Source: Euprymna scolopes (Eukaryota). From it: DNA of 64,000 nt. The DNA lies in NCBI GenBank assembly GCA_053919585.1, contig CM132807.1. The stretch is one strand, 5' to 3'. Made by a program: the position numbers and the translations under genes. Below are positions 9,395-17,389 of this stretch, piece after piece. The notes under the pieces are model-generated. The model searched no databases. It was not told the origin of the DNA and saw only the letters and a list, made by a program, of their open reading frames with translations. Positions within the stretch are counted from its first letter, which is position 1. Every line of letters starts with the position of its first letter.

Positions 9395-9527
9395 CCTACC
9401 CACTGAGGAGAAGGAAAATATTTCTTCGAAACCCCGCGGATTAATGGCTATCAAAATTTCAAATTAAGTATGTTTAACTCTTTTTCAAAGTGTTTTAACA
9501 TGTTTTATTAACTACTTGTTCTTATTT
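9395..9527 (+). repeat. Repeat 3' terminus with a degenerate hammerhead core; tail shared with 33038-33101
   Basis: CTGAGGA (9403), stem II GAAG...CTTC, GAAAC (9428); the tail tttcaaagtg...aacatgttttattaact recurs at 33058-33090; both copies end in (TA)n. Confidence 0.5.
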
Positions 9528-10052
9528 ATATATATATATATATATATATGCATATATATATATATATATATATATATAAATTGAACCTATCTGTTATATT
9601 GACTTAAGTCTCCTAAAATTCATTCAAAAATTATCTGCAAGAAATCTAGGTTCAGTGATCAGAATACATGGAAAAATTCAGTTATAAATGTGGGATTCGT
9701 TTGAACATTGGAAGTTGATGCATCAATCATCAGTGAGAAACTGTATTATACTTCAAAAAGTGATGAGGGAAGAAAACATGCTGATACACCGTCTCGTAGG
9801 TTACTTCAATTAGAATAAGCACTAAATATATAGAGAAATCAAAAGAATCAGAATCATACGAATAAATAATCAATATCTCAAAAAAGCAGATGCGTAAGCG
9901 CAGAATGCATAAATATATAATTAAATAGACATGTCCCCTTTGCGAGCATGCAATGTTTTTTGAAAAAAAAATTAAATATTTTTTCAAATATAAAGTTTGG
10001 AATCACGTAAGAGAATTACTTTTACAGTCTATCTTAGACGGACAGTTTTCTA

Positions 10053-15610: not shown

Positions 15611-16453
15611 CGTAATGTAAAATATTTATTTACTCGAGAATAAAACATTATTTCATTTGAAAATCTTTTATATTTGTGCCAAAAAACAATCACAGTATTT
15701 AATATATTTCTCATGAAACTCATATGTAATGTTCCTACGCTACATTCTTCACCCGTAACTGCCCTTATTAGGTTAAATTTTTACCTTGTGTCTTTCCGGA
15801 AAAACGGTCGAATTACCCTTATAAACCTTGTCCAAAATTAATTTGTTAAATCTACTTACATATAGTGCATATTAGTATAGAATAACTAACTGGCAAATAT
15901 TCCATATTGTCAAAAAATATTGGTTGTCGTATGACAAGAGCTATATCGAGTAGAAGCTCTGGAATTTGGAAGGAAATGGATAACATTATTTTAAAACACA
16001 ATACTGATAAAAAGATAAATGTCTCACTCAAAGTGACAGCAAAGCTAAACAATCCTCTGGATAATTTGCTGGTTGTATATTTTCGCAGCACAGAAAAAAT
16101 TATAGCGAAGAGTATTTAAAACTTTTCAAGAAAAAAAGTTCATCATTTGCTCCAGAAACTGTTTTCATAATGATAACGCTCATATTTTTACGGTATGATT
16201 GAACAAAGAACATTCAAGTAGATAGATTAGTAAATGTTATTTAACATCTGTTGTCTATTGAAAAGACAGGCCTATATTATCCTTCACAAATGAGACACAC
16301 CCCTTTTAAAAACATTCCAGGGTTATATTGATCTATATTACTTCTAATTCAGTCACCTATTGATGCAAAAATGAGATGCACCCTATTAAAAATGTTAAGG
16401 TTTTTCATTGTGTTTTTCTAACTTCTGTATATATATAAAATATAAAATATATT

Positions 16454-16514
16454 TTAGTCATCGACATACAGACCTGTTTCGTTGTTTCACAACTCATCAG
16501 TGCCGCTAGACTAA
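16454..16514 (-). ncRNA. Type I hammerhead ribozyme, copy 1
   Basis: Minus strand: UUAGUCUAG-CGGCA CUGAUGA GUUG-ugaaa-CAAC GAAA CA-gguc-UG UA^ UGUCG-AU-GACUAA. Core CUGAUGA/GAAA intact, 4-bp stem II, short stem III, GUA cleavage triplet, stem I CGGCA/UGUCG extended by UUAGUC/GACUAA. Confidence 0.88.
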
Positions 16515-16519
16515 CACCT

Positions 16520-16590
16520 CTCCCAAGCCGAGGATCGAACCTAGAACCGTGGTGATGACAGTCGGCAGTCCTACCCTCTGACTACGGAAT
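16520..16590 (-). promoter_or_regulatory. tRNA(Asp)-derived Pol III internal promoter (A and B boxes), copy 1
   Basis: Minus strand: A-box-like TAGTCAGAGGG with D-stem GTC/GAC, anticodon-loop-like CTGTCAT, B box GGTTCGATCC, 3' end GGGAG as in tRNA-Asp. Acceptor and anticodon stems are decayed. Confidence 0.7.
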
Positions 16591-16774
16591 CGGTGGCCGA
16601 AATTAAACTGTCCGAATGTCTATTTAAATAAACATCCGTCCGCCACTCGTAGAGGGCTCAAACGTTTGTTTGTAAACAGACCGCGAGCTTCGCATTATTT
16701 CAGCTAAATTAAGTAGCGAGTAAGATAATTTACGATAGTGCTCTACCGAAGAGGGGAGCTTTATAAAATATATT

Positions 16775-16835
16775 TTAGTCATCGACATACAGACCTGTTT
16801 CGTTGTTTCACAACTCATCAGTGCCGCTAGACTAA
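16775..16835 (-). ncRNA. Type I hammerhead ribozyme, copy 2
   Basis: Sequence identical to 16454-16514. Confidence 0.88.
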
Positions 16836-16840
16836 CACCT

Positions 16841-16911
16841 CTCCCAAGCCGAGGATCGAACCTAGAACCGTGGTGATGACAGTCGGCAGTCCTACCCCCT
16901 GACTACGGAAT
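16841..16911 (-). promoter_or_regulatory. tRNA(Asp)-derived Pol III internal promoter, copy 2
   Basis: Same as 16520-16590 with one substitution in the D-loop region. Confidence 0.7.
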
Positions 16912-17389
16912 CGGTGGCCGAAATTAAACTGTCCGAATGTCTATTTAAATAAATATCCGTCCGCCACTCGTAGAGGGCTCAAACGTTTGTTTGTAAACAA
17001 ACCGCGAGCTTCGCATGATTTCAGCTAAATTAAGTAGCGAGTAAGATAATTTACGATAGTGCTCTACCGAAGAGAGGTCGATTGTTCACTTTTCTCAGAA
17101 TAATGTAAAATAGCACTAACCGAAAGTTGTTGCTGGACTTATAAAGTGTTCATGCAAAAATTTAGATCAAATGCTTGAGAATTTTTTTAAATGTTTTGTA
17201 TCAAAGTCGTAGACAAAAATATGCTGAAAATGGTTCGTGTTTGAAAGGCTTTTCTTGAGCATTCCTGAGAATACTAAGAAATTTCAATATTTCAAATCAC
17301 ATAATATCCATATAACAAAGCATAAATAATCTTCAAATTGTAAATCTGCACCGCCCCCTTTTATTTTATTTTTTACTTTGAGAATCACC

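What the first reader, a model, noticed from the sequence alone, without database searches (positions are those of the whole stretch)
16441..17077. Tandem 321-bp units each pairing a tRNA(Asp)-derived Pol III promoter with an intact hammerhead ribozyme: candidate new retrozyme / circular-RNA retroelement
Seen: two near-identical head-to-tail 321-bp copies with no credible ORF. On the minus strand each reads as a hairpin-rich body, then a tRNA-like head (A box, CTGTCAT loop, B box GGTTCGATCC), then a complete type I hammerhead (CUGAUGA, 4-bp stem II, GAAA, GUA cleavage site, bulged extended stem I). The ribozyme is identical in both copies. Established: metazoan non-LTR retrozymes are short tandem repeats with type I hammerheads that yield monomeric linear and circular RNAs and are proposed to be mobilised by Penelope-like RTs; Schistosoma SM-alpha repeats combine tRNA-like Pol III boxes with a hammerhead. 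Inference: a read-through transcript would self-cleave twice and release an exact 321-nt monomer able to circularise. This may be a young, undescribed family that carries its own promoter, in a window where nearly everything else is decayed.
Basis: partly seen in the sequence, partly recalled or inferred. Interest (0 to 1): 0.9.

Follow-up and report, generated by a model that had tools for sequence, protein, structure and literature searches.

The report
Hammerhead-ribozyme retrozyme array in TA microsatellite
This is one young copy of a 321-bp non-coding jumping element of a large mollusc genome (about 15,000 units) that carries a self-cleaving hammerhead ribozyme and a tRNA-like piece. It is a new member of the known "retrozyme" class, and its genomic copies carry marks of ribozyme cutting.

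Summary
Window 16441-17077 is a 1.98-unit head-to-tail array of a 321-bp unit (98% alike), read on the minus strand. Each unit has an identical, canonical type I hammerhead preceded by a decayed tRNA-like piece.

It is not a single locus. The ribozyme 48-mer (up to 3 mismatches) occurs 15,360 times in the 5.9-Gb genome, in at least 2,390 arrays. Sampled units differ from the consensus by about 1.4%.

All 26 sampled arrays sit in TA-rich tracts, nearly all (TA)n microsatellites. The 3' end is fixed in the AU-rich tail and the 5' end varies. 38 arrays start exactly at the predicted cleavage site, against 1, 1 and 2 at control positions. None ends there.

Sister families (284 and 323 bp) keep the tRNA-like-plus-hammerhead module and show two compensatory stem changes. 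RNA libraries hold the repeat at high depth but not its flanks.

A very young Penelope-like element (806-aa ORF, copies 99.4-99.75% alike) uses the same (TA)n targets, but it has no similar ribozyme.

Verdict: a new member of the metazoan non-LTR retrozyme / Sm-alpha-like class. The circular RNA, the Pol III promoter and the helper enzyme are inferred, not shown. The scan already flagged this family elsewhere in this genome.

The parts
16441..17077 (-). Whole insertion: a 1.98-unit head-to-tail array of the 321-bp element (family A)
   Evidence: TRF period 321, 98% matches. BLAST to the unit and to the family consensus.
16762..17077 (-). Unit 1 (5' unit), lacking its first 5 nt. It has 3 substitutions against the family consensus within the matched positions 6-321.
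16441..16761 (-). Unit 2 (3' unit), full length, with 3 differences from the family consensus. It shares the G211C variant with unit 1.
16774..16836 (-). Type I hammerhead ribozyme of unit 1
   Evidence: Core and helices read directly. Custom model R1 gives 94 bits, E 2e-23. Rfam Hammerhead_3 gives only 18.6 bits.
16453..16515 (-). Type I hammerhead ribozyme of unit 2, identical to that of unit 1
16787..16788 (-). Predicted self-cleavage site of unit 1 (after GUA, between 16788 and 16787)
   Evidence: Position 295|296 of the unit. In the genome, 38 arrays begin exactly at unit position 296.
16466..16467 (-). Predicted self-cleavage site of unit 2 (between 16467 and 16466)
16840..16910 (-). tRNA-like piece of unit 1 (A-box-like 16895-16905, B box 16853-16862)
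   Evidence: ARAGORN only at an 80% threshold. z = 5.0 against the genome's own tRNA-Asp-GTC. Coordinates.
16519..16589 (-). tRNA-like piece of unit 2 (A-box-like 16574-16584 with a G-to-A change, B box 16532-16541)
16762..16775 (-). AU-rich tail of unit 1, holding one of the unit's T4 runs (16765-16768). It forms the internal junction with unit 2.
16441..16454 (-). AU-rich tail of unit 2, with a T4 run at 16444-16447. This is the fixed 3' end of the insertion.
   Evidence: 3' end at unit position 315-321 in all 26 sampled arrays. 2,390 such ends in the genome.
16427..16440 (.). Short TA-rich tract next to the 3' end, taken as a remnant of the (TA)n target
   Evidence: Sequence. All sampled arrays abut TA-rich microsatellite.

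Best explanation
The locus is one recent insertion of a high-copy, non-autonomous, non-coding retroelement. It is a metazoan 'non-LTR retrozyme' with an Sm-alpha-like design.

Shown:
- The 321-nt unit carries a canonical type I hammerhead.
- The family is dispersed: about 15,000 units in at least 2,400 arrays.
- Insertion is specific for (TA)n microsatellites.
- Insertions are head-to-tail arrays with a fixed 3' end in the AU-rich tail and variable 5' ends.
- 5' ends are strongly enriched at the exact ribozyme cleavage site.

Inferred mechanism:
1. A transcript that spans two or more units is cut by the hammerheads. They probably act in a paired (dimeric) form through the quasi-palindromic stem III. 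This gives 321-nt monomers with a 5'-OH at U296.
2. A reverse transcriptase/endonuclease nicks (TA)n. It uses the TA-rich DNA end to prime inside the AU-rich tail (AAAAUAUAUUUUAUA), or at a Pol III-terminated U-run there.
3. It then copies the RNA towards its 5' end.
4. Multi-unit products arise by one of three routes: copying uncut multimers, rolling round a ligated circle, or end-to-end template jumps between cut monomers.

The likeliest enzyme source is a Penelope-like element. A very young one with intact 806-aa RT + GIY-YIG ORFs uses the same targets.

The tRNA-Asp-like piece probably serves as an internal Pol III promoter that travels with the monomer. Neither this nor the circular form is shown.
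For: Anatomy:
- TRF and the sequence itself.
- Identical ribozymes in both units.

Family size and age:
- 15,360 hits to the ribozyme 48-mer with up to 3 mismatches, against 0 for the reversed control.
- 24,877 hits for the superfamily pattern.
- 2,390 array 3' ends followed by AT-only sequence.
- 44 units differ from the consensus by 4.5 positions on average.

Insertion signature (26 independent arrays):
- All lie in TA-rich microsatellite.
- The 3' end is always at unit position 315-321.
- The 5' end lies at scattered internal positions in 16 arrays and inside the tail of a further unit in 10.

Cleavage footprint:
- 38 arrays begin at the cleavage site, against 1, 1 and 2 at three control positions of the same design. 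The Poisson tail is below 1e-34.
- The probe 25-mers are about equally frequent in the family.
- No array ends at the cleavage site.

Selection on the ribozyme fold:
- Families A and B differ by compensatory changes at 10.2-11.2 (U-A to C-G) and 2.4-1.4 (G-C to C-G) with an unchanged core.
- 89% of cells are paired, against 19-46% when partners are slid. 22 double-change cells are seen against 10.2 +/- 2.1 in shuffles.
- Between families A and B the ribozyme is the best-kept module: 83% identity, against 55% for the body.

RNA:
- Three libraries recorded as RNA hold the repeat at summed depths of hundreds to tens of thousands (one polyA run covers only part of unit 1), and 0 on the flanks.
- The monomer folds compactly as a circle: -95.2 kcal/mol, z = -3.2.

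Helper candidate:
- 15,396 GIY-YIG candidates genome-wide.
- An 806-aa ORF with RVT_1 and GIY-YIG domains.
- Four ORF copies are 99.4-99.75% alike.
- These elements are flanked by (TA)n and occur in tandem and inverted arrangements.

Literature:
- Metazoan non-LTR retrozymes (PMC7229834).
- Penelope-like elements prefer (TA)n and form partial tandems (PMC8557442).
- Retrozymes as derivatives of Penelope-like elements (bioRxiv 10.64898/2026.07.22.740005).
Against: - No self-cleavage assay was possible, and no reads show RNA ends, strand or a circle. Only assembled contigs could be laid, and some of them run into (TA)n flanks.
- Rfam does not call the ribozyme at its own threshold.
- The ribozyme fold (-10.6 kcal/mol) is not the minimum-energy fold of the 63-nt piece (-15.5).
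- The abundant young Penelope-like element carries no similar hammerhead. Model R1 finds none in 26 of its loci, so no sequence link to a helper exists.
- Target-site duplications cannot be read in microsatellites.
- The tRNA-like piece is not recognised by standard tRNA tools.
- A T4 run lies between successive cleavage sites, so efficient Pol III termination would prevent a two-ribozyme transcript.
- Long arrays show higher-order patterns that point to later unequal crossing-over.
Confidence: 0.8

Rival explanations
1. It is a SINE mobilised by a microsatellite-specific LINE, not by a Penelope-like element. The hammerhead is a passenger or a processing aid.
For: No sequence is shared with the abundant Penelope-like element. 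The fixed 3' end with variable 5' truncation is also the LINE/SINE signature. No target-site duplications could be read.
Against: Exact head-to-tail multi-unit arrays, and inverted pairs around one (TA)n (L002, L013, L076), are the hallmark of Penelope-like insertions (PMC8557442). They are not typical of LINE-driven SINEs. A very young element of that type with intact ORFs uses the same (TA)n targets. No (TA)n-specific LINE was looked for.
Confidence: 0.15
2. The functional unit is a Pol III mini-cassette of about 150 nt: tRNA-like promoter, then hammerhead, then T4 terminator. The ribozyme trims the 3' end of a short RNA. The 170-nt body and the tandem form are by-products, and no circle is made.
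For: One of the unit's two T4 runs lies about 20 nt after the cleavage site, inside the fixed 3' end. The promoter-like boxes lie directly upstream of the ribozyme in all sister families. The array 3' end cannot be told apart from a U-run terminus followed by (TA)n.
Against: Genomic copies include the body, and whole multiples of the unit, upstream of the tRNA-like piece. The reverse-transcribed RNA therefore spans whole units. Arrays that start at the cleavage site continue through a full downstream unit (L002). The body is conserved between families at 55-73%.
Confidence: 0.15
3. The tRNA-like piece is a decayed relic without promoter activity. Transcription comes from read-through by Pol II or from neighbouring promoters.
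For: Standard tRNA finders fail on it. The anticodon and acceptor stems are degraded. The repeat is found in polyA/oligo-dT libraries, and some contigs run into flanking (TA)n. The lack of extra T runs is not statistically meaningful: about 1.6 T4 runs would be expected by my own rough calculation from base composition, and the number seen is close to that.
Against: The B box is perfect in families A and A'. Most sampled A''-type copies have GGTTCAATCC and families B/B' carry an extra T (GGTTTCAATCC/GGTTTCGATCC). Sister families keep near-canonical A boxes, 10 of 11 positions. The T-arm is better conserved than the body: 68-89% against 55-73%. The module keeps its place next to the ribozyme in every sister family.
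Confidence: 0.4
4. It is plain satellite DNA that spreads by unequal crossing-over or segmental duplication, with a fossil hammerhead and no retrotransposition.
For: A 19-unit array shares 7 array-specific substitutions and shows a higher-order repeat pattern.
Against: There are at least 2,390 separate arrays on all large contigs, in both orientations. Each has different flanks, the same 3' end and variable 5' truncation in (TA)n. The 5' ends pile up at the ribozyme cleavage site.
Confidence: 0.03

Closest known systems
Metazoan non-LTR retrozymes (Cervera & de la Pena 2020, PMC7229834; e.g. Mytilus, Acropora and axolotl families)
   Same: Short (150-450 bp) non-coding tandem repeats with a type I hammerhead, GC below 50% (here 44.5%), many dispersed copies, RNA abundant in transcriptomes, a compact predicted fold, and a weak stem III that suggests dimeric action.
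   Different: Here the unit also carries a tRNA-like A/B-box piece. Insertion is strictly into (TA)n with a fixed 3' end in an AU tail. 5' ends mark the cleavage site. The circular RNA has not been shown for this family. No cephalopod or tRNA-linked example is mentioned in that paper.
Schistosoma Sm-alpha / Sj-alpha SINE-like elements (Ferbeyre et al. 1998; PMC2770079, PMC8490949)
   Same: Tandem or dispersed units of about 335 bp that combine a tRNA-like region (scored as tRNA-Gln pseudogenes by tRNAscan) with an active type I hammerhead, in more than 10,000 copies.
   Different: A different phylum, and no sequence relation was tested. Here the tRNA-like piece resembles tRNA-Asp and lies in the 3' half of the unit, directly before the ribozyme. 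The relative order of modules in Sm-alpha could not be checked, because the 1998 paper is not held.
Penelope-like elements with pLTR hammerheads (Cervera & de la Pena 2014; Craig et al. 2021, PMC8557442; Li, Clavereau & Pollet 2026 preprint)
   Same: Partial head-to-tail tandems with 5' truncation, inverted pairs, a (TA)n microsatellite bias, and minimal or dimeric hammerheads with a palindromic stem III.
   Different: The family has no ORF. The abundant young Penelope-like element of this genome shows no canonical hammerhead in the loci sampled, and none like this one.
Ceph-SINEs of squids and cuttlefish (Akasaki et al. 2010; PMC5786205)
   Same: tRNA-related short retroposons of cephalopods, about 280-370 bp long.
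   Different: Ceph-SINEs have the tRNA head at the 5' end, a CORE/RTE-derived body and RTE partners. No hammerhead is reported for them, and the published Ceph-domain motif is absent here (sequence).

Membership tests
Hammerhead ribozyme, type I | Conserved core C3-U4-G5-A6-N7-G8-A9 ... G12-A13-A14, the A15.1-U16.1 pair, and H17 not G | tested here: met
   CUGAUGA ... GAAA ... A-U closing pair, and GUA| in both units. The core columns do not vary in intact copies of five sister families.
Hammerhead ribozyme, type I | Three helices around the core, with helix I open and helices II and III closed | tested here: met
   Stem I has 5 + 6 bp with an internal loop. Stem II has 4 bp and stem III 3-4 bp. 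89% of cells are paired, against 19-46% in slid controls. There are two compensatory pairs.
Hammerhead ribozyme, type I | Score above Rfam's curated gathering threshold (clan CL00010) | tested here: not met
   No gathering-level hit. The best is Hammerhead_3 at 18.6 bits against 48.5, E 0.56. The very short stem III of metazoan type I motifs probably costs score; that is my inference.
Hammerhead ribozyme, type I | Self-cleavage at the predicted site | not testable with these tools
   Indirect only: 38 genomic arrays start exactly at U296, against 1, 1 and 2 at control positions.
Metazoan non-LTR retrozyme | Non-coding tandem repeat of 150-450 bp, each unit with a type I hammerhead; no LTR, PBS or PPT; GC below 50% | tested here: met
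   321-bp units, arrays of 1 to about 19 units, GC 44.5%, no ORF.
Metazoan non-LTR retrozyme | Dispersed, multi-copy, with signs of retrotransposition | tested here: met
   15,360 units and at least 2,390 arrays. The 3' end is fixed, the 5' end is truncated, and the target is (TA)n.
Metazoan non-LTR retrozyme | Expressed as monomeric linear and circular RNA | tested here: inconclusive
   Contigs from three RNA libraries cover the repeat at high depth and not the flanks. Contigs cannot show ends, strand or circles.
tRNA-derived SINE (Sm-alpha-like) | Internal Pol III promoter: A box TRGCNNAGTGG and B box GGTTCGANNCC, 30-60 nt apart | tested here: inconclusive
   The B box is perfect. The A box is loose in family A (TAGTCAGGGGG) but matches 10 of 11 positions in families A'' and B. 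The spacing is about 43 nt. Activity was not tested.
tRNA-derived SINE (Sm-alpha-like) | A tRNA-related region that tRNA models recognise | tested here: not met
   ARAGORN at default settings and Rfam tRNA find none. It is seen only at ARAGORN's 80% threshold. Similarity to the real tRNA-Asp gives z = 5.0.
tRNA-derived SINE (Sm-alpha-like) | tRNA head at the 5' end of the element | tested here: not met
   The tRNA-like piece occupies unit positions 173-243 of 321. The phase of the unit is set by the array ends.
Non-autonomous derivative of a Penelope-like element | Insertion style of Penelope-like elements: partial tandems, inverted pairs, microsatellite bias | tested here: met
   Compared with PMC8557442.
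Non-autonomous derivative of a Penelope-like element | Sequence similarity to the pLTR or hammerhead of a resident Penelope-like element | tested here: not met
   There is no BLAST or model match in 26 loci of the abundant element. Other resident families were not sampled.

The most novel reading that the evidence does not exclude
The family is a self-promoted (Pol III) retrozyme that is currently active. Its ribozyme-cut RNA is reverse-transcribed into (TA)n by a resident, very young Penelope-like element that itself lacks a hammerhead. Tandem arrays would then be built by rolling-circle copying or by template jumps between cut monomers. This would make the family a natural, footprint-bearing system for working out how animal retrozymes move.
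Probability: 0.3. Interest if true: 0.6.

Novelty: new member of a known kind. Interest (0 to 1): 0.42.

Why it matters
How animal retrozymes are transcribed and mobilised is still inferred rather than shown. This family offers several things that make the question testable:
- thousands of very young copies;
- a precise target, (TA)n;
- a fixed priming site in the AU-rich tail;
- a genomic footprint of in vivo ribozyme cutting (5' ends at U296);
- a candidate helper with intact ORFs in the same genome.

The steps from cleavage through priming to array formation, and the promoter question, could be tested directly in a mollusc. For genome annotation, about 5 Mb of this genome (about 15,000 units) should be labelled as this element, not as satellite, tRNA pseudogene or miRNA-like hairpin.

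Tried and rejected
- Rfam at gathering level found nothing.
- ARAGORN at default settings found nothing.
- Rfam in E-value mode on sister copies gave only spurious miRNA-like hits, caused by inverted pairs around (TA)n.
- Ceph-SINE identity was rejected: different architecture, and the Ceph-domain motif is absent.
- A search for a hammerhead like this one in 26 loci of the Penelope-like element found none. The terminal CUUGAAGA...GAAAC motif of that element is not a canonical core, by direct reading.
- Comparing divergence within and between arrays did not separate the models. The medians were 8 and 6 differences, and variants shared within arrays were mixed.
- Avoidance of T runs as evidence for Pol III was not significant.
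- Read laying could use only assembled contigs, so it showed no RNA ends, strand or joints.
Whole-genome pattern counts replaced that step.
- The 1998 Sm-alpha paper is not held.
- Dfam and Repbase cannot be reached, so an existing library entry cannot be excluded.
Full report
**1. Observation.**
TRF reports a single array at 16441-17074 with period 321, 2.0 copies and 98% matches. On the minus strand each unit reads as follows:
- a body of about 170 nt;
- a 71-nt tRNA-like piece (unit positions 173-243);
- a 63-nt type I hammerhead (about 245-307);
- a 14-nt AU-rich tail (AAATATATTTTATA) that holds one of the unit's two runs of four T; the other is the TTTT at unit positions 158-161.

The hammerhead has the full core: CUGAUGA, GAAA, an A-U closing pair and GUA at the cleavage site. 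Stem II has 4 bp and stem III has 3-4 bp. Stem I has 5 + 6 bp around an internal loop. The two ribozymes are identical. Their predicted cleavage sites, 16788|16787 and 16467|16466, are 321 nt apart.

There is no credible ORF. The longest is 64 aa, and no frame of the circular monomer lacks stops.

Two caveats apply:
- Rfam does not call the motif at its curated threshold. There are no gathering-level hits, and the best is Hammerhead_3 at 18.6 bits, E 0.56.
- Neither ARAGORN nor Rfam sees a tRNA.

**2. It is a large, young, dispersed family.**
The genome has 5.9 Gb in 925 contigs. RNA runs that hold the sequence include a 'mollusc metagenome'.
- The family-specific 48-nt ribozyme sequence, with up to 3 mismatches, occurs 15,360 times (7,974 forward, 7,386 reverse). 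The reversed control gives 0.
- A looser pattern that covers sister families gives 24,877 exact hits.
- Array 3' ends followed by AT-only sequence number 2,390, which is a lower bound on the number of insertions.
- Forty-four units from 26 independent arrays differ from their consensus by 4.5 positions on average, or 1.4%.

The duplication in the window is therefore not an assembly artefact. The same exact head-to-tail junction recurs at many of the sampled loci with different flanks, and the 321-324-bp spacing of ribozyme hits across the genome fits this.

**3. Insertion signature.**
- All 26 sampled arrays (1.0 to 4.2 units; elsewhere up to about 19 units) lie in TA-rich tracts, nearly all (TA)n microsatellites.
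- The 3' end is always in the AU tail (unit positions 315-321), directly followed by (TA)n.
- The 5' end lies at scattered internal unit positions in 16 arrays and inside the AT tail of a further unit in 10.
- Inverted pairs of related elements around one microsatellite also occur (L002, L013, L076).

This is the pattern described for Penelope-like elements: partial tandems, inverted structures and a (TA)n bias (PMC8557442). Target-site duplications cannot be read in microsatellites.

**4. Footprint of cutting in vivo.**
A note from another stretch of this genome suggested looking for ribozyme-cut ends, so I tested this on family A with whole-genome pattern counts.
- Arrays whose first base is the base after the predicted cleavage site, preceded by eight A/T, number 38.
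- The same design at three other unit positions gives 1, 1 and 2.
- The four probe 25-mers are about equally frequent among family units, 32-39 of 44.
- The Poisson tail probability is below 1e-34.
- In at least 8 of the 38, the flanking dinucleotide is not TA, which fixes the junction at U296.
- No array ends at the cleavage site (0; one control position also gave 0). By contrast, 2,390 arrays end in the tail.

So the reverse-transcribed RNA often had a 5' end made at the hammerhead site, while priming always took place in the AU tail. Three kinds of template fit this:
- (a) uncut or partly cut multimers;
- (b) ligated circles copied more than once round, and sometimes reopened;
- (c) cut linear monomers joined by end-to-end template jumps.

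The data do not separate them. Internal 295|296 junctions are seamless in the sample. The 3' end also cannot be told apart from a Pol III-terminated U-run followed by (TA)n.

**5. The ribozyme is under selection.**
Sister families were found in flanks and by pattern search: A' (323 bp), A'', B (284 bp) and B'. All place a tRNA-like piece directly 5' of a type I hammerhead, and all end in (TA)n.
- Families A and B differ by two compensatory changes: stem II 10.2-11.2 changes from U-A to C-G, and stem I 2.4-1.4 changes from G-C to C-G. The core is unchanged.
- On 26 distinct ribozyme sequences, 89% of cells form standard pairs, against 19-46% when partners are slid.
- 22 cells carry a change on both sides, against 10.2 +/- 2.1 in shuffles (0 of 500 shuffles reach it).
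- These amount to only about two independent events.
- Between families A and B, identity is 83% in the ribozyme, 68% in the T-arm, 63% in the 5' half of the tRNA-like piece, and 55% in the body.

The hammerhead fold (-10.6 kcal/mol) is not the minimum-energy fold of the isolated 63-mer (-15.5). The stem III region is quasi-palindromic in family A (self-duplex -11.4 kcal/mol) and a perfect 10-nt palindrome in family B (-15.4). This fits the dimeric mode reported for axolotl retrozymes and for the hammerheads of Penelope-like elements (PMC7229834).

**6. The tRNA-like piece.**
- The B box is perfect.
- The A box is loose in family A but matches 10 of 11 positions in families A'' and B.
- ARAGORN calls the piece only at an 80% threshold. 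In one B'-type copy it calls tRNA-Asp (GTC).
- The genome's real tRNA-Asp-GTC (about 714 matches) aligns to the family A piece with z = 5.0 over shuffles, against 2.7 for a tRNA-Gln control. For family B, Asp and Gln score equally.

A tRNA origin is therefore likely, and an Asp origin is plausible.

The piece sits in the 3' half of the unit, not at its head. As a promoter it could give a complete 321-nt monomer only from arrays with two ribozymes downstream of it. By my reading, 16 of the 26 sampled arrays qualify. A T4 run lies between successive cleavage sites, so termination would have to be leaky. Promoter activity is an inference.

**7. RNA.**
Only assembled contigs were available. One oligo-dT library covers both units at summed depths of thousands to tens of thousands. 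Two polyA libraries reach hundreds to about 20,000, with one of them lacking the 5' part of unit 1. All three have zero depth on both flanks. This argues for abundant family RNA. It shows neither strand, ends nor circles, and some contigs run from the unit into (TA)n. As a circle, the 321-nt monomer folds to -95.2 kcal/mol, against -79.3 +/- 4.9 for shuffles (z = -3.2), with 62% of bases paired.

**8. Candidate helper.**
- A Pfam GIY-YIG search gives 15,396 first-look candidates.
- Many belong to one Penelope-like element with an 806-aa open frame (RVT_1 plus a C-terminal GIY-YIG domain).
- Four ORF copies are 99.4-99.75% identical.
- These elements are flanked by (TA)n, end in ...CATA|(TA)n, and occur in tandem and inverted arrangements.
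- The sampled loci show no canonical hammerhead belonging to the element itself, and none like that of family A.

The link therefore rests on a shared target, shared insertion style and similar age, not on shared sequence.

**9. Comparison and novelty.**
The element meets the descriptive definition of metazoan non-LTR retrozymes (PMC7229834). It shares the tRNA-like-plus-hammerhead design of Sm-alpha/Sj-alpha (PMC2770079, PMC8490949). It is not a Ceph-SINE. I found no paper that describes such a family in cephalopods or other molluscs with a tRNA-like module. Repbase and Dfam could not be checked.

Other follow-ups in this scan, on other DNA of the same genome, reached the same classification for this 321-bp family and for a 337-bp sister.

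I rate it a new member of a known kind. Its added value is the cleavage-site footprint and the (TA)n/AU-tail priming rule.

Noticed in passing
window 9403-9460 (+), next to (TA)n at 9527-9578: Another hammerhead-like core (CTGAGGAG...CGAAAC followed by a CCGCGG palindrome). It belongs to a different short-element family that is also seen upstream of a Penelope-like element in L052.
   Followed up: partly
window 39157-39200 (+), next to (TA)n at 39021-39066: A further hammerhead-like core (CTGAGGAG...GAAA) beside a TA microsatellite. An earlier scan note describes a head-to-head pair here.
   Followed up: no
G000 genome-wide; examples L051-L056: [quoted passage not shown] It is inserted in (TA)n, in tandem and inverted arrangements. 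It has no canonical hammerhead; near its end is a CUUGAAGA...GAAAC motif that departs from the core.
   Followed up: partly
L013:1116-1232 (-): A 5S rRNA match above Rfam's gathering score (44.7 against 38 bits). It abuts, in inverted orientation, the truncated 5' end of a family A array. It may be a 5S pseudogene or a 5S-derived SINE.
   Followed up: no
G000:C19:127555184-127581656 and C14:19.09-19.37 Mb: The genuine tRNA-Asp-GTC gene is present in about 714 copies, many of them in long tandem arrays with a period of about 335 bp.
   Followed up: no
L076 (G000:C1:11250800-11258800): A 19-unit family A array. Its units share 7 array-specific substitutions and show a higher-order pattern of variants, which points to later unequal crossing-over. 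It is followed by an inverted, diverged copy.
   Followed up: partly
L002:2447-2829 and L013:1729-1983: Tail-to-tail inverted pairs of family A with a sister family across one (TA)n tract. They form long hairpins that give spurious miRNA-family hits in Rfam.
   Followed up: partly
window, 1,707 N in all: The window holds masked or gap stretches. They were left as they are.
   Followed up: no
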